Source: Macrostomum lignano
Lineage: Eukaryota
DNA: 64,000 bases
Assembly: GCA_002269645.1 (NCBI GenBank)
Contig: NIVC01000319.1
Location: 248,001 to 312,000 of the forward strand
Direction: 5' to 3'
Below are positions 2,762 through 62,094 of this stretch, in pieces. Each line of letters begins with the position of its first letter. Position 1 is the first letter of the stretch. The position numbers were made by a program, and so were the translations under genes. The notes below the pieces were generated by a model. It saw only the letters and a list, made by a program, of their open reading frames with translations, searched no databases and was not told the origin of the DNA.

Positions 2762-3655
2762 ACATTAAGGCAGTGACAATTTGTCTGGTACTAGATACAA
2801 AAGTGAAGTCATTTGTCCGCTACTGGATAAATAATAGTAAAGTTATTTGTCTGATACTAGCTGAGCTACATGAATTCATATGCCACTCTGTGCATCTTTT
2901 CTAGTAAGGTATACTAGCATGATGTTAGAGCATCTTCCTGATGATCAGTCAGTAAGCCTACTAAGTTCAAATTTGTAGTAATGACTCTACTTTTTTATTG
3001 TAACAACCCCAAATGTTATTGTAATAACTTTAAGTCCTTACTTTGACATTTGTGTTTTACAGCAGCAAATGTCATTATTAATTTTGACTGTACTATGACT
3101 ATTGTTTACTGCAAAACCAAAACATACCAATATGTATAGAATGAAATATTATAAAGGTAAAAATCATACAAAACTTTTGGTATTTTGCCCTTGGCTTTTG
3201 AAGGATTTTGCTGTGATCTATAAACCATATGTTGCTGCAATTCTTTAATTAAAATTAGTTAGGTGCCAATGCAGCAAAGCAATGACGTTATAGCTTGCTA
3301 GGCCCTACTTAACATAGGCCTAGTTGATTGATTAAATAAATTTGAGCTTACATGTACATGTAGACAGTAGTTAGTTTATAGTTGCTATTATTCCACCTAA
3401 GAAACATGGAATGGTTATTCCATTTTTGAGAAACAGCACTATCTTATCAAAACAAATATTTTCTATTTCTAGCCTTTTTATTATTTATTTATGTAGTTTT
3501 TATTATATATCCATGTCTATACTATGCCAGACAAATAATTTCACTGTTATTTATCTGGTATTAGACAAATAACTTCACTTTTATTTATTTGGTACTGGAC
3601 GAATAATAGTTACATTATTTATCCAATACTAGATGAATAGTCATTGCCTTGCACT
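2762..3655. mobile_element. Degenerate foldback/MITE-like element with about 100-bp inverted arms
   Basis: Left arm about 2762-2860 (aagtgaagtcatttgtccgctactggataaataatagtaaagttatttgtctg) resembles the reverse complement of about 3525-3655 (aagtgaagttatttgtctaataccagataaataacagtgaaattatttgtctg). Both arms are built of about 30-bp subrepeats. No TSD resolved. Confidence 0.5.
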
Positions 3656-5024
3656 AAATGGTTCCTAGTCATTTTGTCATCTGCCATTTCATCATTTGGG
3701 TGTCTGGGGTGCTCAACTTGACTATGGTCACTTTGTCATCTTAATTAACATATACTACCTGAAGAGAGTCATTTTGTTATCCACTAATCATATTAGTTCC
3801 AACTTCAAATGAATTATTGTGGCAATTAAATATATTTACTTGGAATCCTAATGATCCCAGTCATTTTGTCATCTCGTATTCTCGATTAATGAAACCTGTT
3901 GATTGATTGGTTCTGCTTGCCGTAGTTAGGCCCTATTATTATTAAACAAAAAATAGTTTACACTAACTCGAATCACGCACAGATTGATTGGTTGATGACG
4001 AAGTATCCAGCATAACTAAATATTTGGTCACTTTGTCATATTAATTTTTGATATGATGAAATGGAATATGACGATCTGACCAGTGACCCACTAAATAGGA
4101 TAAAAAATTTAGAAAAAATAAGTTGGCCTAAAAGTTCAATTAAAAATATAAAACTTAGTGTTCAGAAATAAACAAAAAAGGCATCTCAAAAAGAATTATA
4201 AAATAGTTTATCTTAAAAAGCAAACAAAACTTAAAAATAGGCCTAATTGACACTTGGACTTGATGTCAATGACAATACAATAGGCCTACTCCATAGCTCC
4301 ATATTATACATTTGACCCTAAATTAAAATGTCAGTGTCAACAAAATGGATGTCACGAAACTGTATATAGGCCTAGTCTAGACACTAGACCTAGCTAGTGC
4401 AGGACAGCAGCAGCAGGTTAGGCCTATCTGCATCTGCAATCTGCATCCTGCCTGCTGCACTGCACTGTACCAGTGTACTGCACTATTATTGGTATTGGCT
4501 GTCAAAACATGGAAATGTAAAATTATTTTGCTACAGTCTAGAGACATTAAATTATGCTTTTTATAGTGAATTAAGGCTTCAGTTAATGTTTGCCTACTTG
4601 CATTGCATGGTGGCTTTAAATGGTGGCTGGCTTTGAGTCATATTTTGAGTCAGCGGGATGGCTCCTTAAATTGAAAGCAAAACATTTCTAATTTTGATAT
4701 TTAGATATATTAAAATTTACTTAAGAGAATATAGAAACTTGTACGCCATATATTGTAGTAAAAAGGCACAATTACTTACTTTCTTAAATAGTTTTAAGTA
4801 AAGTTAAAAAGGTGTTATAGCTAGTTAATTTTTTCAAATTACATAAATTCTTAGAAAGCTGGGCTAAAGAATGCCAGTACATGAGAATGAGATGAGTAAT
4901 GAAAGGTCCAGTCGTGCAATTTAATTGTAATTTTGCGTAAATTGTATTTAAATTAAAAAATTTACTTGTTCTATAGGGGTTTTGTTCACTTTGTCTATCA
5001 CAAATGAAGGGAAGATGCAGCTTG

Positions 5025-5204
5025 CAGGGTTGTTGGACCCAGAAAATTTTTTTTTGGGGGGGGGCTGGAGAAACAAGTACAATCCAATACTAGAAAATAG
5101 ACCTTGCATAGTTATAGGCCGAAAAATTATGGCCCAATTTTTTGGCCATGGCCTATGGCTGAGAGGTGGCATGGACCCCTTGGCCATCCTTGGATCTGCC
5201 CCTG
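5025..5204. mobile_element. Possible degenerate short hAT-like MITE (CAGGG...CCCTG ends)
   Basis: Starts caggg..ggacccagaaaattttttttggggggggg and ends ggatctgcccctg, resembling CAGGGGCGGATCC-type MITE ends. No TSD found. Confidence 0.3.
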
Positions 5205-5441
5205 TTGGCCTAAGCCACACTCAAATCTGTTACACAGTATGCAGGAAAAATGCCACCCCCCCCCCCCTATACCATCAATCCAAATTTATGCCAGACAAAC
5301 AAATTTACTCTTGATCTATACGCTGGACATTATTAAAAAAGTGTTTCAACAATTAAGGACATTTTTGCATAATGACAATTGATAATACAAGACCCTTTCT
5401 TGCATTACTTACATTTTGGTCTTTTGTATGCCAATAGTAGT

Positions 5442-5854
5442 GGTAACTGATTGTTTCGCCCATAAACCGTTTTGGCCATGTACATTTCGCCCCTAGACCA
5501 TTTCGCCTACAGGCTACAGACTGTTTTACCCATAGACCATTTTGGCCATGGACTGTTTTGCCTCTAATTTGGACCAGGGTTGAAATGAACAAAGTCATAA
5601 GCTGAGAATATGCAAGATGAGACAAAAGTGCCAAGAGCACTGATATTTTATTATAAATTAAAACTAAAAATTAGCATTGAAAAAAGAAAATAAAGATACA
5701 TATATAGCTGTATTTCTAAAATATATAATAATCATTTTGGCCAAAATGCCCATAGCTGAACTGGTTTATAGATGAAACAGACTATTGGCAAAATGGTCTA
5801 GGGGCGAAATGTCCATGGGTAAAATAGTTTGGGGGCAAAACAACTGAAATTCCC
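5442..5854. mobile_element. Non-autonomous DNA transposon (MITE) with subterminal inverted repeats
   Basis: Perfect 22-nt inverted match between 5482-5503 (acatttcgcccctagaccattt) and 5791-5812. Degenerate termini are ggtaactgattgtttcgcc and ggcaaaacaactgaaattccc. Each arm carries repeated tttcgcc/ttttgcc units. Confidence 0.55.
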
Positions 5855-7170
5855 AATAGCTACACTATACACTGGCTCTAGGGCACATTTTTCTAGAGGA
5901 TTATTCTATATCAGATAATTTATCACTTTTCTGACCATTTTTTCAGGTCTATTATACACTAGAATTTTTTGCATATATGTAAGATTTGGGAGTGGGAGGC
6001 CTAAGAAGATAGACAATTTAGTTTGTAGGCCTAACTTTAAAGTATAATAAAGATCTATACAGCTAAAAAAATCTTTAATTTCTTATTTTATCTTATGAAT
6101 ATCTTAAATAATGTTTTATAGGCCCCTATCTTAAATAATTATGACATAAAATATCATATCATATAGCCTTTATATATACTTGTAATATATTGATTTAATG
6201 ATTAGAATATAAATCTAGGCTAGCAATTATAGATAGTCAGTAGGCCTAGTCAGTATTATATTGATAGGCCAAATATTTTTAATGCATAAAATTCTAAAAA
6301 CTAAAAATTAGTATCATTTTTAATCGTTAAAAATCACATATTGATCATTGTCTTTGAATTTATTTTAATGATTAAATAAAAATATAATATATTAAATTAT
6401 CCAATAAGTTTTTTAAATGATCATTTTAAACCTACACGATAGGCCTATGGGCTATGGCACTAAGGTGCAGCACTGATTAGAGCACAAGGGGATAGGGTGG
6501 TACTGAATCCACTGGCACTTATGGAAAAAATCTGACCTAGCAGAATCATTGAATATCTGGAAGGTTGGCAAAGAGTCAAATATGGACACTTGATAAAACT
6601 TGGTGAAACATCTATTAGCTAGCTTAAATTAATTATGTCTATTTAAGATTGCACAAGACACTGCATGAAGGCACTCTGCATGTCATTTACCTAGAGCTAG
6701 AGAACAGACCTGGAGCTTACTAAGCTCGCCTACTAGCTCCTCTAAGGTTGGAAATTCAGCTGCCAGCTGGCCCTTGGGGCTCATAAATCCAGTTGCCAAT
6801 GGCTATTTTTGGTTGACCATTGGCAACTAGCTAAATTCTTGAGAATGGAGATTTCCAAGGCTACATTTGAAAAGTAGAAATTTGTTCTCTTAACTCTAAG
6901 ATTGCTATCTATGCTGCAAATAATAACAAACTAACAATTCCATCATATGATCATATCAATTCATGATCATATCATATCATCATATCATGATCATGAATTG
7001 AACCCTCTAATGGCACTTTTATTACAATTACAAAATCATTTTTTGAAGTTGCCAGATTAGCCTCTGATTCCTAAAATCCAGTTGCCAATGAAATTTTCAA
7101 GGGGCCAAAAAACCCCATATGGCCCAAAAAACCCAGCCTACTAGAAGAAATTCCAATCAAAATCCTTCAG

Positions 7171-10100
7171 CAGGACCAGCCCCTGCTGTACATTGGCAAC
7201 ATTCCCTCCCGCTACCGGGCCAGGGACTTGCGCCGTTTCTTTGCCACCTCCGTGGAGTCGGGGGCGTTCGCCTGCTTCCATTTCCGACATCGACCTCAGC
7301 GCATTGCCGCTGCTGCATCAACTTCAGGAGCCGCGTCGTCTGGCAAGAAGGCGCCACGCCTGCTGTGCTGCTACGCTCGAGCCAGCTCGCCTCAGGCCGC
7401 CAATGAGGTGAGGACCGTCACAACTTGCATGGCTCAGCTGTCACCGAAGGCTGTTGTCCAAATTGCGATTGAGTTGGCGTGCGCCTCCAGTGCTATGAAA
7501 TGCCCTTTAAAGTTACAGCCCACATCAGTATGAGTGTGAAAACCCTGGAAATTCTCTAAACACTTTAGAACCCACCTAGTAGAGATACGAAATTGCTTCT
7601 TGAAACCCTGAAAGCGATTAAGGACTCACGGATCATCTCTAAAGTCAGAATAGTACGCTCGTAACCCTCTAATTTTTGGAGCTCCTCCCGACACTGGAAC
7701 CCCTCTAGTGACCCTGGAACCCTCTAGTGACCCTGCAACCCTCTAGTGACCCTGGAACCCTCTAGTGACCCTGGAACCCCTCTAGTGACCCTGGAACCCT
7801 CTAGTGACCCTGGAACCCCTCTAGTGACCCTGGAACCCCTTTAGTGACCCTGGAATTGGAACCCCTCTAGTGACCCTGGAACCCCTCTAGTGACCCTGGA
7901 ACCCTCTAGTGACCCTGGAACCCCTCTAGTGACCCTGGAACCCCTCTAGTGACCCTGGAACCCCTCTAGTGACCCTGGAACCCCTTTAGTGACCCTGGAA
8001 TTGGAACCCCTCTAGTGACCCTGGAACCCCTCTAGTGACCCTGGAACCCCTCTAGTGACCCTGGAACCCCTTTAGTGACCCTGGAACCCTCTAGTGACCC
8101 TGGAAACCCTCTAGTGACCCTGGAACCCCACTAGTGACCCTGGAACCCCTTTAGTGACCCTGGAACCCTTCTAGTGACCCTGGCACCTCTCTAATGACCC
8201 TGGAACCCCTTTAGTGATACCAAAGCATCCCTCTAGTGACTGTGGATTTCGTAATGAATCACAAAAACTAACAAGAGAATCTGGAACCGGAGCCTCTCCA
8301 TCGCTCTCCATCGCAGGTGATGAGGCTGCACAGCGGCAGCCAGTGGCGCGCCTACTCCGGCGTCAGGGAGCTGCCGCTCGGCCTGCGCTGCCTCATCTCC
8401 GTCTGCGACTCGGCCTCCGCCGCGGTGCCCGCCAGGGTGGCCGCTGATCTCCGGAGCCTGACGGGGCCGCAGTTGGCCAGGGCATTGAAGCGGCACGGCC
8501 TGCAGGTTGGTGGCGGCGCCGTCCCGTCTTCAAATTTGATGCTGCAACAGCAGATCTCACCCCTACGATAGCAGATCTCACCCCTGCGACAGCAGATCTC
8601 ACTATATGCATCTGCAGATCTCACCCCTGCAACAGCAGATCTCACTATATGCATCTGCAGATCTCACCGCTGCAACAGCAGATCTCACCCCTGCAACAGC
8701 AGATCTCACTATCTGCATCTGCAGATCTCACTCCTGCAACAGCAGATCTCACTATCTGCATCTGCAGATCTCACCCCTGCAACAGCAGATCTCACTATCT
8801 GCAACTGCAGACCTCACCCCTGCAACAGCAGATCTCACTCCTGCAGATCTCAGTCCAGACTCCAGTTATTAAGTTCAAACTACAAACTACAGTTAGCAAA
8901 GATCTGCTAACTCAGGGTTCAGATCTGCAATTGCAGAGGCTGAGATCTGCAGTAAAACTTTGCAATCTCTCCATGCAGGTGGGCGCCAGCGGCCGGCCGC
9001 AGCCTGTGGAGCTGTGCCCGCCAGCCTGCATGCCGCAGGGCAACGTTGGCACGCCAACCAGCCACTTCCTTGGCCTGGTGCAGCGCTGCCAGCTTCCTGC
9101 CGGCCTCATCGCCAGCCTGGGCCTGGATCTGCGCTCGGCCGGCAAGCGGCGGGGCAAATTCTCCGCCGTGCCCTTCGACTACGGCGGCGCCGTCCGAAGC
9201 TTCTCGACGTCTGCGCCGCCGCGGGTCGATCTTGATGAGGAAGATTCGGACGTGGCCGAAAATCATTTACGGCCAGACACTGCGGACGAGGAGGCCGGAC
9301 AAGCGGCTGGCGGCACGGATGATGAAGAGGAGGCTGAAGAGGAAGACGAGCCGGCCGAGGACTGGGAGCGGTTCGAGGCGCTTCACGACGATCCGCACAA
9401 CGTGGACCGGTGGAAAGAGCGCAAGTGAGTTTTATGGTGATGATGCGCTGCTTATGACTACTGCAGTTAGTAGTGTGATGGGAACATGCAATTTCTTTAT
9501 CAAAGTTGAAAATTGACCCAAAAACTGTAATAGGCTGACATGGTAGAGTGACAAGTAGTCAAGTGGAGTGACCAGTGGGAAACCATGAAGAGTGACAAGT
9601 AGTCAAGTGGAGTGACCAGTGGGAAACCATGAAGAGTGACAAGTAGACACCAGAGAGTGACAGGTAGACTGTAGACACCATAGAGTGGCAAATAGACACC
9701 ATAGAGAGTGACAAGTAGACACCATAGAGTGACAAGTAGACATCATAGTGACAAGTAGATACCATAGAGTGACAAGTAGACACCATAGAGTGACAAGTAG
9801 ACATCATAGAGTGACAAGCAGACACCAGAGAGAGTGACAAGCAGACACCAGAGAGAGTGACAAGCAGACACCAGAGAGAGTGACAAGCAGACACCAGAGA
9901 GAGTGACAAGCAGACACCAGAGAGAGTGACAAGTAGTAGAGTTGCTCGTTTAATTACTAGCAAATAAAAAAGCTTAAAATCAACATTTACGGCAAAAACC
10001 AACTCGTTTCAACCCACTAGGGCCGTCGTCAGAATATATTTTATCATTGAACGAAACAGTCAATATAAATAAGTAAACGATTGTACTATCTAAAGTGTCA

Positions 10101-16603: not shown

Positions 16604-19600
16604 ATGAGCAGCCTGTGGTCCGCCTACCCGTCGGTGACGCAGCTTCGCCAGCTGCTTGATGACAAAGCTGAGGACGTTGACAGTCGTCAGAATGACCGGA
16701 CGCTGCTGCACCGGGCCGCGACAGACAACAAAATTGAGGTGATCCGTCTGTTGAAGGAGCACGGCGCCGATCTGAACGCCTTAAACAGCGCAGGCAAGTC
16801 GGCTCTCAACCTGGGCCTCGAGAAGCGCCACTTTGAGACCGTGGAGCTGCTGCTAGAGCTGGGAGCCGATCCTAACACTGCCACTGTGAACACGGAGTCG
16901 ACCCTGCACCAAGCGGCCGCAATCAAAGACTCCAGGTTCATCAGCCGACTGCTCGCACATGGAGCCAAATGCAATGCGCCGGATCGGTTGAACGACTGGC
17001 CAATCCATCGGGCCTCCCTAGAGGAGTACCTGGAGACGGTGGGCGTCCTCCTACATGAACACTCTGAGCACATCAACGTCATTGGCAACCGCGGACTCAC
17101 CCCACTGCACATCGCGGCCACAAACAGCAACGCGGAACTGTTTGCCGTACTTGTTGAGCACGGAGCCGACATTGCTGTTAAAGACTTGCAAGGACGGACG
17201 CCGCTTGATCTGGTGATCATGAACCAGGACAACGCAATCCTCGATACCTACGGGTATCTGCTGGCGAACAAGGTAGTCAAGTGTCCGGAAGCCGGAAGTT
17301 TCCGCACGGTTTTCAGCACGGACTCAGCTAGAAAGTTTTTAGACACTCTGACCAAGATTGACAACGAGTACAGGCGCACTTTCGTCCCAACGGACACAGA
17401 CATTGAGTACTTCCAAAACCGGCTGGATGAAGCAACCAACGAAATGCTATTGAGCTATATTGAGTCAGACGAACGAATCGACATCAACGAGTTTGTACAG
17501 ATCATAATCCGTGCTGTGAGCAACGGCTTGGTAGACGAAATCATCTCCAAGGACCTGGTGCCCAAGATAGCAGAGAGCATCTTTCGACATGTGCTCGTAT
17601 CTGAGAATGAGATTTTGCTGCAGGAACTCATGAATCTAGGAGTTCTGTGGGGCAAGATCGTTCAATTCTTGGAAAGTAACATAGTCGAGGTGTACGAGAA
17701 GACGCTTATTGCAAAGCGGGTGGGGATCCGAGGCCTGGTCTGGCGCGAGTGCCTTAAAGACGAAGATGATGAAGACGAAGACGAAGACCAGAAGCAACAA
17801 ACGAAAATCCTCGGTTCCGGCGAAAGCTTGCAAGAAGTGACGCAACGAGTCTCCTACGACAAGCTGCACATGCTAGTGTCCAAAACCACGAAACTGTGGC
17901 AGCTGAGGCACACCGACTTCATTGACGAACAGACGGATCGTTGCAACTTGGACTCGCCGATAGAAGTAATGAAGGACCCAGTCCGTACCCTGGCTATGTG
18001 GAGCGTGCTCACAGGCCGGTTTAAGTTAACGCCACACCTTCTGCGCCAAGAGCCGTACGATCTCATCCCACAGGCGCTTCTCATGGCTAAACTGCTTCGC
18101 TGCCTCAGCAACCTGCGAAGCATCGAGGACGTTTATAGAAACAAGGCAATAAATATGGCCAACACGTGCGAGGGGATCGCTATTCAAGCTCTGCGACGCA
18201 TTAAGGAATTCGACACGTCGCAGAACAACATTCTCACCATGGAGTACCTGAGGCTTCCGCTCCGATCCTACGGTGACTACGACGCCATCGACCTGGCCGC
18301 CAGGGGCGAGTCCAGCAGCTTCGTCACCATCGATGTGGTACAGGACACGTTAGACATGTTCTGGTACTCCGACTTCTTCTTCGTCCGCAGCAACGTCTGG
18401 AAGATGGAGGGCGCCATTCTCATGGGTTTCGTGCCGCCGCTCATGCTGCTCCTACCGCTGATCATGGAACGCTTCCGTAAAGAGTCGCCAACCTTTAAGA
18501 ATCCTGAGATCTTGCAGGACAGCAAGTTCGTGCAGGTGAAAAGTGCGTTGCACAGCCACAACGAGCATCACGGGCACGAGATGACAGGCGCAGAGGAGCG
18601 GCTCCTGCCGCAGCCACCTGAAGCGGAAGTGCCGCCCAAGAAGCCATCGTATGTGCGGCGAGTATTCAAAGAGTTAAACGCCTTCTATGATATCCCCTGC
18701 GTAAAATTTCGGTTCCACGTGACGGCGCACGTGATGTTTGTTCTGCTTCTGTCGTTCGTCGTGATGCGCCTATTCAACAAGAGGATGAGTGTGTCGGAGT
18801 GCATCTGCTACGTGTGTCTGCTGGGCTTTCTGGTGGAAGAAATTAACGAGATCTTCAAGAGCAAAAAGGACGAATCGCTCGCCTCCTACTTCTCGGATGG
18901 CTGGAACCTGATCGATCTGACGGCTATACTTTGTGGCATCATAAGCTTTGCGTTGAGGCTGGATGACGAAATTTCAGGAAAGTCTGAGCATGCTGAGAGT
19001 GTTCGATACTGGGCTCTGGTGCTGCTGTCAACAACCTGCCTGGTGTACTGGATTCGACTGCTATTCGTTTCGGTGATCTTGGAAAGCCTCGGCCCCAAGC
19101 TGAAGATGATGGCGCTCATGGTGAAGAAAGACTTCCTGCCATTCTTGTATATCCTGTTCATCCTGATGATCGGCTTCGGAGTTGTGTTCCAGGCGCTGCT
19201 GTACCCACCGACCAACTTTGGCACATCATCTCTGAGCCCAGGGGATACCGACAACGGCACAGAGGCGCAGGAGATCGCTGTGCGGATGTTCAGAACGACC
19301 TTCTTTATGATCGTCGGCGAGTACGGCCTGGATGACAAGACGAATCTCTGCAGTTCTCCGGATGCCAAAGAAGACTGCGTTCACGAGACAGGATCTCTGC
19401 TGGTTACTAACATCTTCATGGTCATCTACATCGTGATAGTCCAGATTCTTCTGCTCAACGTCATCGTGGCGATGTTTAGCGAGACAATTGACGCCGTGAA
19501 TCGCGAGTCAACCGCCATGTGGCAGTTCGAGAAGTACGACCTCACCCAGGAGTTCTTCATGCGCTCCAAGCTGCCGCCACCGTTCAACGTGCTGCTGGAG

Positions 19601-19966
19601 CTGCGCCGCCTCATCGCGTGGATCATCAGGCGCTTCCGGCGAAACAAGAGTAGCGACGGCAAGCGAACGGCACCGCGCAGCACCGAGAAGAGCGAAGTCG
19701 AGGTGTTCCTCTACTACTTGTACTACCAGGCCATCAGCTGCAGGGGCCAGCGCTCCACCTTCCGAGGCGTCGTGATCGACGAGGAAGATCTGGACGAGGG
19801 CAACAAGATAATCTTTGAGCAGATCAAGGACATTCAAAAGGAGCTGAAGCGCCTGCGGAAACTGGAGACGCTCGTCCAGAAGATGAGCAACAGCAGTTCA
19901 GGACCGAGCAGGCAGCTGCCCCCGCATCGGCAGCTGGCTGCCCTGGCTGAAAACCAGGACACCTGA
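16604..19966 (+). CDS. Intronless ankyrin-repeat TRPM-like cation channel, 1120 aa
   Basis: Single uninterrupted ORF. Five ankyrin repeats plus a partial sixth (about 16694-17240). TRPM MHR4-like motif PVRTLAMWSVL...ALLMAKLLR, pre-S1 AIDLAA..FV...VQDTLDMFW, FYDIPCVKF, six hydrophobic segments, pore FFMIVGEY with pore-loop Cys pair, ILLLNVIVAMF, TRP box WQFEKY..LPPPFNV, C-terminal coiled coil. No NUDT9-H or kinase domain. Confidence 0.92.
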   Translation: MSSLWSAYPSVTQLRQLLDDKAEDVDSRQNDRTLLHRAATDNKIEVIRLLKEHGADLNALNSAGKSALNLGLEKRHFETVELLLELGADPNTATVNTESTLHQAAAIKDSRFISRLLAHGAKCNAPDRLNDWPIHRASLEEYLETVGVLLHEHSEHINVIGNRGLTPLHIAATNSNAELFAVLVEHGADIAVKDLQGRTPLDLVIMNQDNAILDTYGYLLANKVVKCPEAGSFRTVFSTDSARKFLDTLTKIDNEYRRTFVPTDTDIEYFQNRLDEATNEMLLSYIESDERIDINEFVQIIIRAVSNGLVDEIISKDLVPKIAESIFRHVLVSENEILLQELMNLGVLWGKIVQFLESNIVEVYEKTLIAKRVGIRGLVWRECLKDEDDEDEDEDQKQQTKILGSGESLQEVTQRVSYDKLHMLVSKTTKLWQLRHTDFIDEQTDRCNLDSPIEVMKDPVRTLAMWSVLTGRFKLTPHLLRQEPYDLIPQALLMAKLLRCLSNLRSIEDVYRNKAINMANTCEGIAIQALRRIKEFDTSQNNILTMEYLRLPLRSYGDYDAIDLAARGESSSFVTIDVVQDTLDMFWYSDFFFVRSNVWKMEGAILMGFVPPLMLLLPLIMERFRKESPTFKNPEILQDSKFVQVKSALHSHNEHHGHEMTGAEERLLPQPPEAEVPPKKPSYVRRVFKELNAFYDIPCVKFRFHVTAHVMFVLLLSFVVMRLFNKRMSVSECICYVCLLGFLVEEINEIFKSKKDESLASYFSDGWNLIDLTAILCGIISFALRLDDEISGKSEHAESVRYWALVLLSTTCLVYWIRLLFVSVILESLGPKLKMMALMVKKDFLPFLYILFILMIGFGVVFQALLYPPTNFGTSSLSPGDTDNGTEAQEIAVRMFRTTFFMIVGEYGLDDKTNLCSSPDAKEDCVHETGSLLVTNIFMVIYIVIVQILLLNVIVAMFSETIDAVNRESTAMWQFEKYDLTQEFFMRSKLPPPFNVLLELRRLIAWIIRRFRRNKSSDGKRTAPRSTEKSEVEVFLYYLYYQAISCRGQRSTFRGVVIDEEDLDEGNKIIFEQIKDIQKELKRLRKLETLVQKMSNSSSGPSRQLPPHRQLAALAENQDT

Positions 19967-20542: not shown

Positions 20543-20950
20543 CTGACTGACTGACTGACTGACTGACTGACTGACTGACTGACTGACTGACTGACTGACT
20601 GACTGACTGACTGACTGACTGACTGACTGACTGACTGACTGACTGACTGACTGACTGACTGACTGACTGACTGACTGACTGACTGACTGACTGACTGACT
20701 GACTGACTGACTGACTGACTGACTGACTGACTGACTGACTGACTGACTGACTGACTGACTGACTGACTGACTGACTGACTGACTGACTGACTGACTGACT
20801 GACTGACTGACTGACTGACTGACTGACTGACTGACTGACTGACTGACTGACTGACTGACTGACTGACTGACTGACTGACTGACTGACTGACTGACTGACT
20901 GACTGACTGACTGACTGACTGACTGACTGACTGACTGACTGACTGACTGA
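20543..20950. repeat. (CTGA)n microsatellite, about 102 apparently perfect units
   Basis: 408 bp of uninterrupted ctga read directly. Confidence 0.98.
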
Positions 20951-21223
20951 CGGGTCCCCCACTTTGATTGACATTCTCATTCTGCTTGCGACCCCAATAT
21001 GTAAAGTGCTGAGAGCAAGACTTGACAAGTGCGGGATGAGAAAAGAATTGCAAAGCTCCCAAGTGAGCGAGTTCTAATTTTTTATATTTAATTATCAAAG
21101 TACCATTCAGTGAGATTAAACTGGCAAATTATTAACTTTGAGAGCCTACTAGCGAGAGGGAAGAAAAGCACACGATATGCGGAGAGAGGGCGAGACAGCC
21201 GCACGTGAACAATAAAGCCAACA

Positions 21224-22240
21224 TGGAGCAACTGGGATTAAAGCAACTTGGATTAAAGCAACTTGGATTAAAGCAACTTGGATTAACGAAACTGGGATTA
21301 AAGCAACTGGGATTAACGAAACTGGGATTAAAGCAACTGGGATTAACGAAACTGGGATTAAAGCAACTGGGATTAACGAAACTGGGATTAAAGCAACTGG
21401 GATTAAAGCAACTGGTATTAAAGCAACTGGGATTAAAGCAACTGGGATTAACGCAAATGGGATTAACGCAAATGGGATTAAAGCAACTTGGATTAACGCA
21501 AATGGGATTAACGCAAATGGGATTAAAGCAACTTGGATTAAAGCAACTGGGATTAACGCAAATGGGATTAAAGCAACTTGGATTAAAGCAACTGGGATTA
21601 AAGCAACTGGGATTAAAGCAACTGGGATTAAAGCAACTGGGATTAAAGCAACTGGGATTAACGCAAATGGGATTAAAGCAACTGGGATTAAAGCAACTGG
21701 GATTAAAGCAACTGGGATTAAAGCAACTGGGATTAAAGCAACTGGGATTAAAGCAACTGGGATTAAAACAACTGGGATTAAAGCAACTGGGATTAACGCA
21801 AATGGGATTAAAGCAACTGGGATTAAAGCAACTGGGATTAAAGCAACTGGGATTAAAGCAACTGGGATTAAAGCAACTGGGATTAAAGCAACTGGGATTA
21901 AAGCAACTGGGATTAAAGCAACTGGGATTAACGCAAATGGGATTAAAGCAACTGGGATTAAAGCAACTGGGATTAAAGCAACTGGGATTAACGCAACTGG
22001 GATTAAAGCAACTGGGATTAACGAAACTGGGATTAAAGCAACTGGGATTAAAGCAACTGGTATTAAAGCAACTGGGATTAAAGCAACTGGGATTAAAGCA
22101 ACTGGGATTAAAGCAACTGGGATTAACGCAAATGGGATTAAAGCAACTGGGATTAAAGCAACTGGGATTAAAGCAACTGGGATTAAAGCAACTGGGATTA
22201 ACGCAACTGGGATAAAAGCAACTGGGATTAAAGCAACTTG
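21224..22240. repeat. 15-bp minisatellite (aagcaactgggatta)
   Basis: About 67 tandem units; source of the KQLGL artefact ORF. Confidence 0.97.
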
Positions 22241-22296
22241 GATTTATCCATAGCCTTCACAGTTTACAGTCAGTTCATCCAGTTTTCACCAGCAGT

Positions 22297-26869: not shown

Positions 26870-29800
26870 TGTAATTGCCTCGCAATATTATTATCAATTT
26901 GTTCTAAATAGGCGAGTGAGTTATATTATAAATGTACATCTTGTGTCGCATGAGTCATGTACGCCGTATTATTGATTTGTACGCATAAAACCTCAAATAT
27001 ATATATATCGCTAACTGGCCAGTTTGGGCCCCGTGATTTATTTTTCTCGCTCAGCTTAACACGCGGCCTTCAGACTTTACAGTGGCGTCGCAAGCAAGCC
27101 CACTTGGTCCAGTCACTCATGGCTCAATTCATCTCACTGCCACCCCTGAGCAATTCAGCACTAGTGCAGATCAACAGAATGCCGGTAAACGCTGGAACAA
27201 ATGGTCCGATCATTTTTGTGACTTTATCGAAGCGTCAGGCATCAAAGACGAAACTCAGAAGTGCAAGCTCCTGGCCTACACGGCCGGCAGAGAAATCGCG
27301 CAAATCATTAAAGACCTGCCAGATGACAAGAAAGACAGCCTCGAAACTCTGCTCGCAGCAATAAAAGAGCACTTCAAGGAGCGCAACAACATCGTATTTG
27401 CCCGCTATCAGTTTCGTCTATGCGTTCAGCAAACCGGAGAGCCAGTGGACTCCTGGTACTCCCGACTCAACTCAGCGGCCGAGACATGCGAGTTCTCAGC
27501 ACTCAAGGACTCCCTAATCAGAGATCAGATAGTGGCGACATGCTGCTCCGATAAACTTCGGCGAAGATTGCTGCAGGAGTCCAACATCTCTCTCGGCGAT
27601 GCGTTGAGACAAGCGCGCGCGTTTGAAGCAGCAGAAGAGCAGGCCACGGCCATTGAGAACTCCAGTAGCATCGCAGCAGTGCACAGAGCGGCACCGAAGC
27701 AGTTCAGAGACAGCGGAACGCGCCCGAACAGTCAGCGGGTCCCTGGTGGCCAAGCAAACAGCGGCCCAACCAGCTGCTATCGATGCGGCGAACGCGGGCA
27801 CAGCTCATGCAACGCGGCAAAAGGCAAAACCTGCCTGGCATGCGGCAAGCCAAACCATCTCGCCAAAGCATGCAGACAACGCAGGCCTCAAACAAGCTCC
27901 AGCATCAACGCCGTAGCGGACAAAGAAGCTGAGGCGGTCTTCATCGATCACGATTCGCTAAATGAGGAGGCCTTCACTATCCAGTCGCAAAAAACGGCAC
28001 CCAGACGCAACTCCGCCAACACTAATCTGAGGATCGAGGGCAAGGACTTCATCGTACTCGTGGATAGTGGAGCCAGCTGCAACGTCATGAGCGAGGAGAA
28101 CTTCCGGCGGCTAAGAAATGTTCGACTGCGCAGCGCCATCCATCCAATTTTCAGCTACGGGTCCACAACGCCTCTCCAAGTCCTGGGTGTCGCTGACCTC
28201 AACGTGAGCACCGCAGCTAGCAGACAACTAGCTTCATTCTACATCACCAAAGGCTGTGGAACCACACTACTCGGTCGAGAAACCGCTTTCAACATGGGAA
28301 TTCTGCACATCCAACATCCAACAGTTGAAGTCAACTCGGTGCAGCCCACGGAAAATCTAGCCGCATCAGGTATTCAAGAGCTGTTCTCCAAGTACAGAGA
28401 TGTCGACCAAGATCTTCCAACCGAACTCCGCATCAGCAGCATCCTTGGTGAGTTTAAGTCAATCTTCGAAGGCCTTGGCTGCGTTAAGGGCGTCGAGGTC
28501 GACGTTCGTCTTCGACCAGAAGCTGTCCCAGTCTGTCACCCACCCTCCAGAGTTCCCGTACACCAGCGGTCGGCGGTCATCGCGGAACTTCAGGCTCTCC
28601 TCGACCAAGGAATCATCGAGCGCGTCAACGGCCCGTCACCGTGGGTCTCCCGCATGGTTGTCGTCCCGAAAGAAGGCGGTGGCATCCGCATCTGCCAAGA
28701 CCTGCGCGACGTCAACTCATTTGCCGTGCCAGAAAAGCAGCCCATCCCAACCTTTGAGGAGATCACGGACGAAATGGCGGGTTCCACGGTATTCAGCGAG
28801 CTCGACATCGTAAAGGCTTTCCACCAAATTCTTGTCAAACCGGAATCCCGTCACGTCTTCACCTTCAGCACCCCACTGGGTCTCATGCGACTGACCAGAC
28901 TCAGCATGGGATTCACCAACGCATCCGAGATATTGCAAAGGGTTATGACAGGCGTCCTGAGCGGCCTTGACGGTGTCCGATGGGCACACGATGACATCAC
29001 CGTCTTTGCGAGCACGATGGAAGAGCACAACATCCGACTAAAACAGTGCTTCAAGCGCCTACAAGACCATGGAATCACACTCAATCCGAACAAGTGTCGC
29101 CTGGCACAGCCTTTCATCAATTTTCTTGGTATGCGCATCAGCGCACGAGGCGTTCAGCCTGCAGCCGAGAAGATCAAGGCCGTCAAAGACTTTAAGGAGC
29201 CAACAAATGTGTCAGAGCTGCGCTCATTCCTCGGTTTGGCCACCTACCTGTCCAGGTTCGTTCCGAACTTCTCAGATCTGACGCAGCCAATGCGAGAACT
29301 GCTAAAAAAAGGTCATAAATGGTGCTGGTCAGAAAGGCAACAAAAAGCATTCCTGCAAACAAGAGCAGCGATCTGCAATGAGAGCGTCCTGGCCTTCTTT
29401 GACGTGAATCTCCCAACAGAAGTTCATGTGGACGCCTCGCCAGTCGGCCTGGGTGCCATTCTCAGCCAAGTGGATGAGAAAGGCGTTCGCAAACCGGTCG
29501 CCTTCGCCAGCAGGTCGCTCACGCCAGTTGAGCAGCGATACGCTCAAATTGAACGCGAGGCGCTTGCGGTGAAATTCGGGTGCCTACGTTTCGAGCACTA
29601 CCTCAGCGGCTGCCCAGATCTCACAGTCATCACGGATCACCGCCCATTAGTCCCGCTTTTTCAACCTGGTTCCAGGCCTCCACCAAGGATTGAACGGATG
29701 GCTTTAAGAGTGCAGCACCTCAAATTCAAGCTCATCTATCAGCCGGGGCCACAGAATCCAGCGGATGTCCTCAGTAGACAACCTGAAATGCAGACAAAGG

Positions 29801-31462
29801 ACAACCCCGGGGAACTCCTGGACAGACGCTTCATTAACGCAGTCGCCATCGGCTCTACTCCGAAAGGACTGAACTTTGCAACAATTCAGGAGGCTTCAAA
29901 GTCAGACGGCACGATCCAAGCAGCTCTATCAGCTCTACGAACTGGCCAATGGGACAAGCAGAACAGAGATCTTCGAGCTTTGTCCTGCCTGCAGCAGGAG
30001 CTTTCAGAACATGACGGCGTGCTACTACGGAGCTCGTTGATCGTGATCCCGAGCAGCTTACGTCGGACGGTGCTCCAGCTGGCACATGCAGGCCACCAAT
30101 GCTGCCGAAAAACTATGGACAGACTGCAAACCAAAGTATGGTGGCCAGCGATGAGAAGCGACTGCCAGACGTTCGTCCAGTCTTGCTTCCCCTGCCAAGC
30201 GACATCGCCGAAGAGCCTCGCACCGCCACCACTCTCACCGTCGCAACTTCCGGACGGAGCATGGCTGGTTCTTGGAATGGACTTTTACGGCCCAGTCCAA
30301 GGGAAAATGCTCCTGGTGACAACCGATCTCTTTTCAAAATTTCCCGAGGTCGACATAGTCAGCTCAACATCAGCAGAGGCAGTGCTTCCGCATCTCCGGA
30401 CTCTGTTTAGCAGATACGGCATCCCGTTGGAAATCGTCAGCGACAATGGACCTCCGTTTAACTCGGCAGAATTCACAAACTTCCTCTCAGAGTTCGGCAT
30501 CAAGCATCGCCGGATCTGTCCGCTGCACCCCGAGGCGAACGGAGCGACCGAGCGAGTCAACAGGTGCATCAACAAGGTCATCAGAGCGGCCATCGCAGAA
30601 GGACGCAACTGGCGCACCGCACTCGACGACTGGCTGCTCGCTCATCGCGTCACTCCGCACTCGGCAACCGGCGTGGCACCAGCCGAACTGCTCATGGGCC
30701 GAGCTCTCAACGACGGCCTCCCGTCAATCCAACCATCGCAACCTGTGCAGCACGACCGAGCCGAACTCGCAAAGCGTCACGAGGCCTACAACAACCAGAT
30801 GGCAGCAGGTTTCAACCGCTCCAGGAGGGCCAAGGCAGCCAATGTCAAGCCGGGTTCGGCGGTTCTCCGCAAGCGGACGAGACGCACGAAAATTCAAACG
30901 CCTTTCGAGCTCGAACCCTGGACCGTCACCGACAAGCGAGGCGATTCCTACGTCCTGCGGCAAGGCGACCGGACATGCACTCGCCACCTGACGCACATCC
31001 GGCCTCTGACAGCGACCGAGGACCCACCACCAGAAGCGGACGCTGGCGCCGCCTCGCCGGAGCGCGGCATTGCTGAGAGGCCGCACCCGAGAGCGGCCAA
31101 GGACAAGCCTATCAGCTACAGAGTTTGACGGGTTTTGACGGGTAACTGGTGCTAAGGGCTGAGACAAGTGTTTTTTACCCTTAATGTTTTATTCCTTTTT
31201 CCTTATCCTTTTAATCCGCATTTTTGAGCTTTTTCGTTTTTGGGGAGAAGTGTAATTGCCTCGCAATATTATTATCAATTTGTTCTAAATAGGCGAGTGA
31301 GTTATATTATAAATGTACATCTTGTGTCGCATGAGTCATGTACGCCGTATTATTGATTTGTACGCATAAAACCTCAAATATATATATATCGCTAACTGGC
31401 CAGTTTGGGCCCCGTGATTTATTTTTCTCGCTCAGCTTAACACGCGGCCTTCAGACTTTACA
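26870..31462 (+). mobile_element. Full-length Ty3/Gypsy LTR retrotransposon
   Basis: LTRs 26870-27081 and 31251-31462 (212 bp each, TGTAA...TTACA, no difference seen). TSD CAGCA at 26865-26869 and 31463-31467. PBS-like TGGCGTCGCAAG at 27083. Polypurine tract GGGGAGAAG at 31242-31250. Confidence 0.98.
27119..31128 (+). CDS. Gag-Pol polyprotein (Gag with 2 CCHC knuckles, protease, RT, RNase H, integrase)
   Basis: CYRCGERGHSSC and CLACGKPNHLAKAC; LVDSGAS; WAHDD; VDASPVGLGA; HAGH..CFPC; MDFYGP, SDNGPPF, EANGATER. The order PR-RT-RH-IN is Gypsy type. The likely ATG at 27119 is one base out of frame with the 4-kb open frame. Confidence 0.93.
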
Positions 31463-60893: not shown

Positions 60894-62094
60894 TTTATCA
60901 ATATTCATCATGTACAGGCATTTCAATCATGCCTGTTTTTACCTAGGCAACCTGCCCAAAATACATATTTATCTAAATTCTACTATACAAGCATAGCTAG
61001 TCATTGGTCAATTTAATCTAGCCATTTGCAGTATAATGTGTATGTAGCTTAGTATTTGTATAGACAAAATGACATTTTCTAGGTTGGAATGATTTAAATT
61101 TAGATAGCAAACTATGAAAATAATAGCCTGTAATTAGCCCTGCTATTGCACCAATAATTGAGGGGTTTTGTTGCCTTTAGACTTCATATGAAAAAGCAAA
61201 TGCATAATATTCATCTAACACTTAGGCCTTATATAGCAAAAAACTAAAACTAAAAGGCTATACCAAAATGGTTCTATTATCTATTAAAATGCTCTAGCTT
61301 TCTAAATAGGCCTACCTTGAAAAAAACATAAGTAGATAATAGACATTAAAAAAATGGCAAACAACAAAAAACAAACTTGCAAGAATTTTTTTGCTTAGAT
61401 ATATAAATATTTTACTTATCAAATAAACATTGAATATAGTTCATTCTTATTTAGGCATAGGCTAGTTTAGTTTTATAATTTTATAATATTTGCAATACTA
61501 GGGCCTAATAGGTCTTATTTTTCTAATATATTTTGTAAAATTTAGGCCTCTTTAAGGATTTAGGAGCCTATTTAATTTTTTGACATTAATAGGCCAAGTC
61601 CAAAAAATGATAAGAAAAAACTTGAGGCCTCTTTCAAACTTAAAATTAGGCCTAGCTAGGCTATTTTATGACTAAATAAGTAAACTTAGGCCTAGTTGCC
61701 TAATTAGATTTAAAGCCTGGGCTTATAATATTTACAAGGTCTGAGGTCTAGGGTTTACATATAGATATAGACTATTATTTTGTGATTGTCAATTGAGGTG
61801 GCCCCAAAAAGGGCTGCTTTAGTGAAAGCAATGCCATTCTATAATAGTTTATTTGATGTCATTTTCTGCCATTTAGATGGTCTCATACTCTAATGTCTGC
61901 TTATAGTAATTCTTATAATAATGCTTAGTAAGCATATATATAATGCTCAATAATGCATAGTAATGCTTATATGTTTTTTGTCTTCATCATTTGATCCTAA
62001 GACTGTGTCATCTTAAGCCTAGGCCTAATTGTCACAGTTTAGTTAGTATATTGTGATATATGCCATCAATTTACCATTTAGTCAAGTATTCTTT

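What the first reader, a model, noticed from the sequence alone, without database searches (positions are those of the whole stretch)
16604..19966. Ankyrin-TRPM chimeric channel: ankyrin repeats replace the TRPM MHR1/2 module
Established: TRPM channels have N-terminal melastatin homology regions and no ankyrin repeats, whereas ankyrins typify TRPA, TRPC, TRPV and TRPN. Seen: 5-6 ankyrin repeats followed by MHR3-like (IFRHVLVSENEILLQELMNLGV) and MHR4-like (PVRTLAMWSVL..ALLMAKLLR) segments, a TRPM-style pore (FFMIVGEY, with Glu as in TRPM1/3/6/7, plus the Cys pair) and a TRPM-style TRP box (WQFEKY rather than the TRPC EWKFAR). The ORF is fully open. Inference: a domain-shuffled TRP subfamily with a new sensory N-terminus.
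Basis: partly seen in the sequence, partly recalled or inferred. Interest (0 to 1): 0.85.

Follow-up and report, generated by a model that had tools for sequence, protein, structure and literature searches.

The report
Ankyrin-headed TRPM-like flatworm channel gene
This is a real, intact Macrostomum lignano ion-channel gene in which ankyrin repeats sit where TRPM channels normally carry their SLOG/MHR1-2 domain, but this design is already published as the flatworm TRPM_MCLZ ("TRPM-like") family, the target of the anti-schistosome drug meclonazepam, so it is a new free-living member of a known kind.

Summary
Window 16604-19966 (+) is one open 1120-aa ORF from the free-living flatworm Macrostomum lignano. 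It has six canonical ankyrin repeats, no SLOG/MHR1-2 domain, a significant TRPM MHR4 ("TRPM2-like") domain, and a TRPM-type S1-S6 core. The core keeps the Gly-Glu pore filter, the pore-loop Cys pair, the VSLD Ca2+ site and the WQFEKY...PPPF TRP domain. It is not an assembly chimera: a second allele or homeologue carries the same ORF, at least ten paralogue clusters share the layout, and orthologues occur in flukes, tapeworms and a monogenean.

The "new subfamily" reading does not hold. The architecture is published as TRPM_MCLZ (Smp_333650), which was cloned, expressed and shown to be a Ca2+-permeable channel. The window protein shares its S1 His-x3-His signature (17 of 21 clade members versus 1 of 99 other TRPM-like proteins) and five of seven published pocket landmarks.

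The "MHR3-like" segment is not significant by sequence and is only weakly supported by fold search.

What appears unreported is the large M. lignano expansion, and that these copies keep canonical TRPM features the parasite orthologues have lost. Deep placement relative to TRPM and TRPS is unresolved.

The parts
16604..19966 (+). Complete single-exon CDS (1120 aa plus stop) of an M. lignano ankyrin-TRPM-like channel. It is an allele or homeologue of BOX15_Mlig022043g1.
   Evidence: It differs from the deposited copy at 10 nucleotides (7 synonymous, 3 non-synonymous), pN/pS about 0.13.
16694..17281 (+). Six canonical ankyrin repeats (residues 31-226), preceded by an N-terminal capping helix pair (residues 2-20).
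   Evidence: Pfam Ank families. PDB ankyrin-1 and DARPin matches at E 1e-63 to 1e-30. AF2 pLDDT 70-87, and Foldseek rmsd about 2 A to DARPins.
17282..17932 (+). All-helical region (residues 227-443) in the position of MHR3, including an acidic low-complexity insert at about 385-415. Homology to MHR3 is not shown by sequence.
   Evidence: No PDB sequence match. hhalign is not significant. The AF2 model shows helix-turn-helix repeats (pLDDT 61-83 for residues 272-382). In the fold search of 213-687, all 50 top matches are TRPMs with 320-470 aligned columns at E about 1e-3.
17939..18376 (+). MHR4-homologous domain (residues 446-591; Pfam PF25508 'TRPM2-like').
   Evidence: Pfam 31.8 bits against a cut-off of 27. 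Aligns to TRPM4 545-728. hhalign probability 99.3 %, E 7e-21.
18377..18661 (+). Pre-S1 segment and a low-complexity, poorly conserved linker (residues 592-686).
   Evidence: AF2 pLDDT below 50 and no conservation among paralogues.
18662..19507 (+). S1-S6 transmembrane channel domain (residues 687-968). It carries S1 H705/H709, the VSLD Ca2+ site E746/E749/N768/D771, S4 R818/F821, the pore filter G905-E906-Y907, and pore-loop C915/C925.
   Evidence: Ion_trans at 710-968. Alignments to TRPM2 and the TRPM2 chanzyme. Site table and landmark spacings.
19508..19588 (+). TRP domain (residues 969-995): TRP box WQFEKY (W973-Y978), E983, and TRP box 2 PPPF (991-994).
   Evidence: Alignment to human TRPM2 WKFQRHDLIEEY...PPPF. 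Y978 corresponds to Sm.TRPM_MCLZ Y1117.
19778..19894 (+). Predicted long C-terminal helix or coiled coil (residues 1059-1097), a candidate tetramerisation helix.
   Evidence: DSSP helix 1060-1097 in a low-confidence model. Weak coiled-coil-type Pfam hit to SlyX, and the segment is conserved in the paralogue P0002. Pfam TRPM_tetra is not hit.

Best explanation
The ORF encodes a subunit of a tetrameric, Ca2+-permeable, non-selective cation channel of the flatworm 'TRPM-like' TRPM_MCLZ family. A block of six canonical ankyrin repeats sits where TRPM channels carry the nucleotide-binding SLOG (MHR1/2) domain. MHR4, probably MHR3, the S1-S6 core, the TRP domain and a C-terminal helix are of the TRPM type.

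Inferred mechanism: the channel is gated through the S1-S4/TRP (VSLD) cavity, the pocket that binds meclonazepam in the schistosome orthologue. Cytosolic Ca2+ acts as a co-factor at the conserved S2-S3 acidic site, and divalent cations pass a Gly-Glu filter. Without SLOG and NUDT9H there should be no ADP-ribose or nucleotide control. The ankyrin block most likely supplies protein-protein or inter-subunit contacts. The endogenous stimulus is unknown.

The gene belongs to an M. lignano-specific expansion, whereas the parasite genomes in my hit set showed one orthologue cluster each. With F821 at the key S4 position (H946 in S. mansoni; Phe in cestodes) and F742 in place of Y864, it is predicted to be insensitive to meclonazepam.

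Shown here: the architecture, the homologies, residue conservation, the distribution across flatworms, and the integrity of the gene. Inferred: permeation, gating, and the role of the ankyrin block.
For: Architecture.

Family: the closest full-length relatives all have Ank, no SLOG, and a TRPM-like core. They come from M. lignano (at least ten 50 %-identity clusters), Opisthorchis, Dicrocoelium, Fasciolopsis, Schistocephalus and Cichlidogyrus.

Parasite members are TRPM_MCLZ orthologues: they reproduce the published Sm.TRPM_MCLZ landmark spacing 4/33/4/75/3, with H, H, Y, E, R and the variable S4 residue Y/N/F (PMC12861061). The Opisthorchis model carries two channel domains, matching the published exon 3a/3b duplication. 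Two are named 'TRPM7' by their sources, the legacy label of TRPM_MCLZ.

Link to the window protein: it has H705, H709, E746, R818 and Y978. The S1 H-x3-H pair occurs in 17 of 21 clade members against 1 of 99 other TRPM-like proteins. NJ support for the wider clade is 71 %. The M. lignano-clade HMM scores the parasite clade at 231 bits, canonical flatworm TRPMs at 208 and other TRPMs at 134-182.

Function of the family: Sm.TRPM_MCLZ was expressed in HEK293 cells and gives Ca2+ signals and single-channel currents (PMC10788528).

The gene is real and constrained: it is colinear with a second copy, and pN/pS is about 0.13.
Against: The direct join of the M. lignano clade with the parasite TRPM_MCLZ clade has only 29 % NJ bootstrap support, and the backbone is unresolved. 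HMMs of the parasite clade and of canonical flatworm TRPMs score the M. lignano cores about equally. Two of the seven pocket landmarks differ (F742, F821), and the pore filter differs from the parasites' (GEY against FEVS). I could not obtain the Smp_333650 sequence itself. No transcript or functional data for this particular gene were available. Both AF2 models have low confidence (mean pLDDT 54 and 51).
Confidence: 0.78

Rival explanations
1. Ancestral retention rather than replacement. The Ank-MHR-TRP channel is a separate, old TRP lineage, sister to TRPM plus TRPS, that never acquired SLOG. Its ankyrin repeats would then be the ancestral TRP N-terminus, continuous with the degenerate ankyrin repeats of MHR3/4.
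For: The deep backbone of my tree is unresolved (bootstrap 0-22). Rohr et al. place TRPM_MCLZ 'next to' the other TRPMs rather than inside them and call it 'TRPM-like' (PMC12861061). MHR3/4 are reported to be divergent ankyrin repeats (Burroughs 2015, as cited in PMC13143021).
Against: Every named member comes from Platyhelminthes, so ancient origin would need loss in all other sampled animal lineages. The cores score higher against flatworm canonical TRPMs than against non-flatworm TRPMs. The repeats are close to the ankyrin consensus (best matches are DARPins and ankyrin-1), unlike old, degenerate TRP ankyrin domains. Flatworm TRPMs with a short Ank block in front of SLOG exist (P0025, P0124), which offers a stepwise route within flatworms.
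Confidence: 0.12
2. Independent convergence. The M. lignano Ank-TRPM-like genes and parasite TRPM_MCLZ acquired ankyrin N-termini separately, so the window gene would not be a TRPM_MCLZ family member.
For: Only 29 % bootstrap support joins the two clades. Parasite-clade and canonical flatworm HMMs score the M. lignano cores equally. Ankyrin-region similarity between the window protein and the parasite proteins is weak (E 1e-3 to 5e-5). A second, different Ank-plus-SLOG architecture shows that ankyrin gain has happened more than once in flatworm TRPMs.
Against: Both clades have the same SLOG-less layout and the same ankyrin-to-S1 spacing (471 against 487-490 aa). They share the otherwise rare S1 H-x3-H pair. 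TRPM_MCLZ orthologues are the best non-Macrostomum hits of the window protein. Smp_333650 has strong free-living flatworm hits (E 1e-150).
Confidence: 0.08
3. Artefact or dead gene: an assembly or gene-model chimera joining an ankyrin gene to a truncated TRPM gene, or an intronless retro-pseudogene.
For: The CDS is intronless in a genome rich in retroelements. An intact Ty3/gypsy ORF lies 7 kb downstream. Some deposited paralogue models are fused to integrase ORFs.
Against: One uninterrupted 3363-nt ORF spans both parts. The same ORF is present in contig NIVC01001761.1, with 99.7 % CDS identity but 94-97 % flanks and different repeat lengths. pN/pS is about 0.13. Many paralogues and orthologues share the layout. 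The Schistocephalus orthologue is held as a 1413-aa product on a 4.6-kb contig, and the schistosome orthologue was cloned and is functional (PMC10788528). Paralogue P0004 has an intron, so the family is not a set of retrocopies.
Confidence: 0.02

Closest known systems
Schistosoma mansoni TRPM_MCLZ (Smp_333650) and its roughly 63 parasitic-flatworm orthologues (Park et al. 2024, PMC10788528; Marchant 2024, PMC11731825; Rohr et al. 2026, PMC12861061)
   Same: N-terminal ankyrin repeats, no SLOG/MHR1-2 and no NUDT9H. A TRPM-like S1-S6 core and TRP helix. S1 H-x3-H, the S2 Glu, the S4 Arg and the TRP Tyr pocket residues. The same ankyrin-to-S1 spacing. Restricted to flatworms.
   Different: The host is free-living. 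There are at least ten paralogue clusters rather than the one orthologue cluster per parasite species seen in my hit set. The CDS is a single exon against three exons. It keeps a Pfam-detectable MHR4 domain and the canonical G-E-Y pore filter, whereas the parasite proteins have FEVS and no PF25508 hit. It has F742 and F821 in place of Y864 and H946. The S2 site reads E-x-x-E rather than E-x-x-Q. It is shorter (1120 aa against about 1270-1410 aa).
Canonical TRPM channels (TRPM2/3/7/4/5/8; flatworm TRPM_PZQ)
   Same: The MHR4 domain, the S1-S6 core, the VSLD Ca2+ site, the Gly-Glu filter as in TRPM1/3/6/7, the pore-loop Cys pair, TRP box 1 and the PPPF box 2, and a C-terminal helix.
   Different: The defining MHR1/2 (SLOG/LSDAT) domain is absent, with six canonical ankyrin repeats in its place. 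There is no NUDT9H or kinase domain.
TRPS (soromelastatin, ced-11-like; Himmel et al. 2020, PMC7306681)
   Same: A divergent sister-type relative of TRPM with a TRPM-like core.
   Different: TRPS has SLOG and Nudix domains and no ankyrin repeats, and it is widespread in animals. This protein has ankyrin repeats and neither of those domains.
TRPN (NOMPC), TRPA1, TRPC and TRPV
   Same: An N-terminal ankyrin repeat domain in front of a six-TM TRP core.
   Different: The channel core, TRP domain and MHR4 are of the TRPM type. PDB matches to non-TRPM TRP channels are at least eight orders of magnitude weaker.
Choanoflagellate 'TRPW' channels (bioRxiv 10.64898/2026.06.15.732245)
   Same: Another example of a TRP lineage whose N-terminal cytosolic module differs from SLOG, showing that this module is plastic.
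   Different: TRPW carries WD40 propellers rather than ankyrin repeats, and it belongs to a different lineage.

Membership tests
TRPM (sensu stricto) | N-terminal MHR1/2 = SLOG/LSDAT domain | tested here: not met
   No LSDAT_euk or LSDAT_prok hit in Pfam. A local SLOG HMM hits 84 other proteins in the set but none of the Ank-clade proteins.
TRPM (sensu stricto) | MHR4 / Pfam PF25508 'TRPM2-like' domain before S1 | tested here: met
   31.8 bits against a cut-off of 27. Alignment to TRPM4 545-728. hhalign probability 99.3 %, E 7e-21.
TRPM (sensu stricto) | MHR3 domain | tested here: inconclusive
   Profile-profile score is 15.5 against 13.1 for a reversed control. Domain length matches. The fold search of a low-confidence model returns only TRPMs, with 320-470 aligned columns at E about 1e-3.
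TRPM (sensu stricto) | S1-S6 core and TRP domain most similar to TRPM (WKFQR-type box 1, PPPF box 2) | tested here: met
   All 60 best PDB matches are TRPMs at E 2e-27 to 4e-18. WQFEKY...PPPF aligns with WKFQRH...PPPF of TRPM2.
TRPM (sensu stricto) | Pore-loop Gly-Glu/Gln selectivity filter and conserved Cys pair | tested here: met
   G905-E906 and C915/C925 align with the TRPM2 chanzyme. Among other TRPM-like sequences, Gly occurs in 98 of 99 and Glu in 87 of 99.
TRPM (sensu stricto) | VSLD Ca2+ site (S2 E, Q; S3 N, D; TRP E) | tested here: met
   E746, N768, D771 and E983 are identical to the TRPM2 positions. Q is replaced by E749.
TRPM_MCLZ-type 'TRPM-like' channels | N-terminal ankyrin repeats with no SLOG/MHR1-2 and no C-terminal enzyme domain | tested here: met
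   The published description is in PMC11731825 and PMC12861061.
TRPM_MCLZ-type 'TRPM-like' channels | S1 histidine pair (H827/H831), reported as absent from other schistosome TRPMs | tested here: met
   H705 and H709 are present. The pair occurs in 17 of 21 clade members against 1 of 99 other TRPM-like sequences.
TRPM_MCLZ-type 'TRPM-like' channels | Other pocket landmarks: Y864, E868, R943, H946 (naturally variable H/Y/F) and Y1117 | tested here: inconclusive
   E746, R818 and Y978 are conserved. Y864 is replaced by F742, and H946 by F821, the cestode state. Landmark spacing is 4/33/4/72/3 against the published 4/33/4/75/3.
TRPM_MCLZ-type 'TRPM-like' channels | Phylogenetic grouping with bona fide TRPM_MCLZ orthologues | tested here: inconclusive
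   NJ bootstrap is 29 % for the direct join and 71 % for the wider clade. HMM affinity is moderately in favour.
TRPM_MCLZ-type 'TRPM-like' channels | Activation by meclonazepam and Ca2+ permeability | not testable with these tools
   This needs heterologous expression. From the published H946F mutant and the cestode data (PMC12861061), F821 predicts insensitivity to the drug.
TRPN / TRPA / TRPC / TRPV | Channel core and TRP box of that family (for example EWKFAR in TRPC) | tested here: not met
   The first non-TRPM PDB matches to the pore-TRP segment come at E 2e-7 (algal TRP1) and 6e-7 (TRPV3), against 1e-15 for TRPMs. The NOMPC match is through the ankyrin repeats only.
TRPS (soromelastatin) | SLOG and Nudix domains, no ankyrin repeats, and a divergent TRP box 2 | tested here: not met
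   There is no SLOG or Nudix domain and ankyrin repeats are present. TRP box 2 is the TRPM-like PPPF. Tree placement relative to TRPS was not tested because no labelled TRPS sequence was available.

The most novel reading that the evidence does not exclude
The M. lignano genes are the least-derived members of the TRPM_MCLZ lineage. They keep MHR4, the G-E filter and the Ca2+ site, and they show that the ankyrin-for-SLOG channel arose before the Macrostomorpha-Neodermata split. If a rigorous tree placed this lineage outside TRPM plus TRPS, its ankyrin repeats would be an ancestral TRP N-terminus. That would contradict the current view that ankyrin repeats were lost before the TRPM-TRPS split, and it would define a further metazoan TRP family.
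Probability: 0.12. Interest if true: 0.6.

Novelty: new member of a known kind. Interest (0 to 1): 0.3.

Why it matters
TRPM_MCLZ is a validated anthelmintic target whose natural stimulus and physiological role are unknown, and so far it has been studied only in parasites. M. lignano is a free-living laboratory flatworm. Finding that it carries a large, intact and apparently constrained set of TRPM_MCLZ-type genes offers a non-parasitic system in which to ask what these channels sense and what the ankyrin domain does. Because these copies keep recognisable TRPM features, they also give the clearest sequence bridge between the divergent parasite channels and canonical TRPMs. That helps date the SLOG-to-ankyrin change to the early history of the phylum, or earlier. 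For general TRP biology, this is a confirmed natural example of wholesale exchange of the N-terminal regulatory module, but it is not the first report of it.

Tried and rejected
1. The word-indexed homology search was swamped or sparse.

2. No supplementary sequences or pocket tables of the TRPM_MCLZ papers are held as text. I therefore used the published residue numbers as a spacing test instead.

3. Full-length and mid-region AF2 models with a 7-sequence alignment came out at low confidence (mean pLDDT 53.8 and 50.5). I used them only for the ankyrin block and as a weak fold-level hint.

4. The fold search of the full model was dominated by DARPins, as expected.

5. hhalign for MHR3 was not significant.

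6. The NJ tree with Kimura distances did not resolve the backbone. No maximum-likelihood software was available, and there was only one outgroup (fish TRPC2b).

7. The HMM affinity test did not separate parasite TRPM_MCLZ from canonical flatworm TRPMs in one direction.

8. The organism of the Logan relatives P0012 and P0010 (run DRR639838) could not be identified.

9. The retrocopy idea for the intronless CDS was rejected as an explanation for the family, because paralogue P0004 has an intron and the gene is constrained.

10. TRPC, TRPN or TRPA identity was rejected on core similarity.


Full report
**What is in the window**

Window 16604..19966 (+) is a single open reading frame of 1120 codons. 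It starts at an ATG, with an in-frame TAA 22 codons upstream. The region is about 54 % G+C, within a window whose composition ranges from 29 to 59 %. A near-identical protein is deposited as 'hypothetical protein BOX15_Mlig022043g1' of the free-living flatworm Macrostomum lignano.

**Check of the observation**

- Pfam finds ankyrin families over residues 14-212 (E 4e-25 to 2e-18), PF25508 'TRPM2-like domain' at 381-574 (31.8 bits, cut-off 27) and Ion_trans at 710-968. It finds no SLOG/LSDAT hit.
- Against the PDB, the N-terminus matches ankyrin-1 and DARPins (E 1e-63 to 1e-30). Residues about 441-1021 match TRPM3, 7, 4, 2 and 5 (E 5e-34 to 2e-29).
- The AF2 model shows six helix pairs with a 33-residue period (residues 31-226, pLDDT 70-87). 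They superpose on DARPins and ankyrin-B at about 2 A. These are canonical repeats, not merely 'ankyrin-like' ones.
- The quoted MHR4-like motif aligns to human TRPM4 545-728. A profile of the post-ankyrin region aligns to a profile of the post-SLOG region of 45 canonical TRPMs with probability 99.3 % and E 7e-21, covering window residues 446-591.
- For the S1-TRP segment, all 60 best PDB matches are TRPMs. For the pore-TRP segment, the first non-TRPM channels appear at E about 1e-7, against 1e-15 for TRPMs.
- Residue-level alignments confirm the Gly-Glu filter and both pore-loop cysteines (FFMIVGEYGLDD..C..C against YFQIYGELFLDD..C..C). They confirm the TRP domain (WQFEKYDLTQEF..PPPF against WKFQRHDLIEEY..PPPF). 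They also confirm the VSLD Ca2+ site: E746, N768, D771 and E983 are identical, and E749 stands in for the Gln.
- One item does not hold up. The 'MHR3-like' segment (residues 326-373) aligns colinearly with canonical MHR3 but is not significant (E 0.24-0.39; score 15.5 against 13.1 for a reversed control).
- Two indirect points favour a retained MHR3. The distance from the end of the ankyrin block to S1 is 450-490 aa in this clade, against a median of 449 aa from the end of SLOG to S1 in 52 canonical TRPMs. A fold search with a low-confidence model of residues 213-687 returns only TRPM structures in the top 50, with 320-470 aligned columns at E about 1e-3.

**Not an artefact**

The locus is colinear over more than 14 kb with contig NIVC01001761.1 of assembly GCA_002269645.1. 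The CDS differs at 10 of 3363 positions (7 synonymous, 3 non-synonymous, pN/pS about 0.13). The flanks are only 94-97 % identical, and the repeat arrays differ in length. This is a second allele or homeologue with the same uninterrupted ORF, and the gene looks constrained.

**It is a family**

An exhaustive HMMER search with the non-ankyrin part found 1556 relatives. A top tier of these is much closer than ordinary TRPMs. Every full-length member of that tier has ankyrin repeats, no SLOG, and a TRPM-like core. The members are:

- at least ten 50 %-identity clusters in M. lignano, plus two further clusters with shorter gene models;
- the flukes Opisthorchis viverrini and O. felineus, Dicrocoelium dendriticum and Fasciolopsis buski;
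- the tapeworm Schistocephalus solidus, and the monogenean Cichlidogyrus casuarinus;
- unnamed sequences from Logan and MetaClust.

In an NJ tree of S1-TRP (124 sequences, rooted on a fish TRPC2b), these proteins form an M. lignano clade (bootstrap 100) and a parasite/other clade (bootstrap 90). The two join with only 29 % support, or 71 % for the wider group that includes two more M. lignano paralogues. The deep backbone is unresolved.

**Already known**

The literature search turned up TRPM_MCLZ (Smp_333650), the schistosome target of meclonazepam.

- Park et al. (PMC10788528) cloned it, recorded currents and Ca2+ signals, and described 'multiple ankyrin-like repeats'.
- Marchant (PMC11731825) states that it 'lacks the NH2-terminal MHR1/2 or SLOG domain' and instead has ankyrin-repeat-like modules.
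- Rohr et al. (PMC12861061) note 'N-terminal ankyrin repeat domains', call the group 'TRPM-like', list 63 parasite orthologues, and report a duplicated channel exon (3a/3b) in Opisthorchis, Clonorchis and Paragonimus.

My parasite-clade proteins are these orthologues. They reproduce the published landmark spacing H827-H831-Y864-E868-R943-H946 (4/33/4/75/3) exactly. At the variable S4 site they carry Y in Dicrocoelium and Fasciolopsis, N in Opisthorchis felineus, and F in the cestode. The O. viverrini model contains two channel domains. Two of them carry the legacy name 'TRPM7'.

**Link to the window protein**

The window protein has H705, H709, E746, R818 and Y978, with spacing 4/33/4/72/3. 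It has F742 in place of Y864 and F821 in place of H946. The S1 H-x3-H pair is reported as absent from other schistosome TRPMs. In my alignment it occurs in 17 of 21 clade members but in only 1 of 99 other TRPM-like sequences.

HMM affinity is moderately in favour of the link. The M. lignano-clade HMM scores the parasite clade at 231 bits, canonical flatworm TRPMs at 208 and other TRPMs at 134-182. In the reverse direction there is no clear preference.

A supplementary BLAST table shows that Smp_333650 has strong hits in free-living planarians (Schmidtea E 1e-150, Dendrocoelum E 3e-145). None of the papers I read discusses free-living homologues.

**Mechanism**

Shown here: the architecture, the conserved pore, the Ca2+ site, the TRP residues and the VSLD pocket residues.

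Inferred from the family and from TRPM structural knowledge: a tetrameric, Ca2+-permeable cation channel, gated through the VSLD/TRP cavity with Ca2+ as a co-factor. It would lack nucleotide or ADP-ribose regulation because SLOG and NUDT9H are absent. The ankyrin block would provide protein-protein or inter-subunit contacts.

F821 corresponds to the published H946F mutant and to the cestode state, both with lost meclonazepam sensitivity. I therefore predict that this channel is insensitive to the drug.

**What appears to be new**

- The family is present, and strongly expanded, in a free-living macrostomid. That places the SLOG-less ankyrin architecture at or before the base of the flatworm groups sampled here.
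- The M. lignano members keep features the parasite orthologues have lost. These are a Pfam-detectable MHR4 domain and the canonical G-E-[YF] filter, where the parasites have FEVS and no PF25508 hit.
- The window gene is a single exon, and paralogue P0004 has one intron of about 100 nt just before the channel domain. The schistosome gene has three exons.
- Flatworm TRPMs with a short ankyrin block in front of SLOG exist: M. lignano P0025 and Clonorchis P0124. They are a possible intermediate on the way to the SLOG-less form.

**Verdict**

This is a new free-living member, within a lineage-specific expansion, of the known TRPM_MCLZ / 'TRPM-like' family. Interest is modest (0.3). The open question with some upside is the deep placement of the lineage relative to TRPM and TRPS, which my distance tree cannot answer.

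Noticed in passing
window 27082-31128 (+): An intact 1348-aa Ty3/gypsy-type gag-pol ORF (gag/PNMA, zinc knuckle, aspartyl protease, RT, RNase H, integrase) lies 7 kb downstream of the channel gene. Some deposited M. lignano models of channel paralogues (P0165, P0166; about 2900-3000 aa) are fused to integrase ORFs.
   Followed up: partly
window 20543-20951 and 21227-22244: A perfect (CTGA)x102 microsatellite and a 15-bp tandem array of about 68 copies lie just 3' of the gene. They create long spurious ORFs on both strands. In the other allele or homeologue (NIVC01001761.1) the alignment around these arrays is broken and offset.
   Followed up: partly
window 41965-43515 (-) and 50729-51988 (-): Large exon-like ORFs with Vps41 TPR-like hits and with SWIRM-associated/Myb (SMARCC/SWI3-like) hits. 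These are ordinary neighbouring genes.
   Followed up: no
P0025 (M. lignano, 1781 aa) and P0124 (Clonorchis sinensis, 1708 aa): These canonical flatworm TRPMs carry a short Pfam-significant ankyrin block (Ank_2, 32.9 bits) in front of the SLOG domain. This third architecture could be an intermediate towards the SLOG-less ankyrin form. They sit in a different tree clade from the window protein.
   Followed up: partly
P0008 (Opisthorchis viverrini, 1906 aa): The deposited model contains two tandem channel domains after one ankyrin N-terminus. This matches the published exon 3a/3b duplication in opisthorchiid TRPM_MCLZ, so the model probably concatenates two alternative exons.
   Followed up: yes
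alignment of S1-TRP cores: Parasite TRPM_MCLZ orthologues lack the canonical Gly-Glu pore filter (they read FEVS) and have no Pfam PF25508 hit. All M. lignano members keep G-[ED]-Y and, in most, the PF25508 hit. The M. lignano clade also has E-x-x-E in S2 where nearly all other TRPMs have E-x-x-Q.
   Followed up: partly
L003 (NIVC01001595.1) 4001-7484: Paralogue P0004 lies inside the span of an opposite-strand LRR/EF-hand gene, presumably in one of its introns. It has a single intron of about 100 nt at about residue 622, in the low-complexity linker just before the channel domain.
   Followed up: partly
L002 (Logan DRR639838 contig 5415) 1298-4516: P0012 is a 1072-aa ankyrin-TRPM-like relative from an unidentified organism (CDS 45.5 % G+C). 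It has Y..Y rather than H..H in S1 and S in place of the S3 Asp. Its source could extend the family's taxonomic range.
   Followed up: partly
window 1-6000 and 60000-64000: The ends of the window are markedly AT-rich (29-36 % G+C), against 50-59 % in most of the gene-bearing middle.
   Followed up: no
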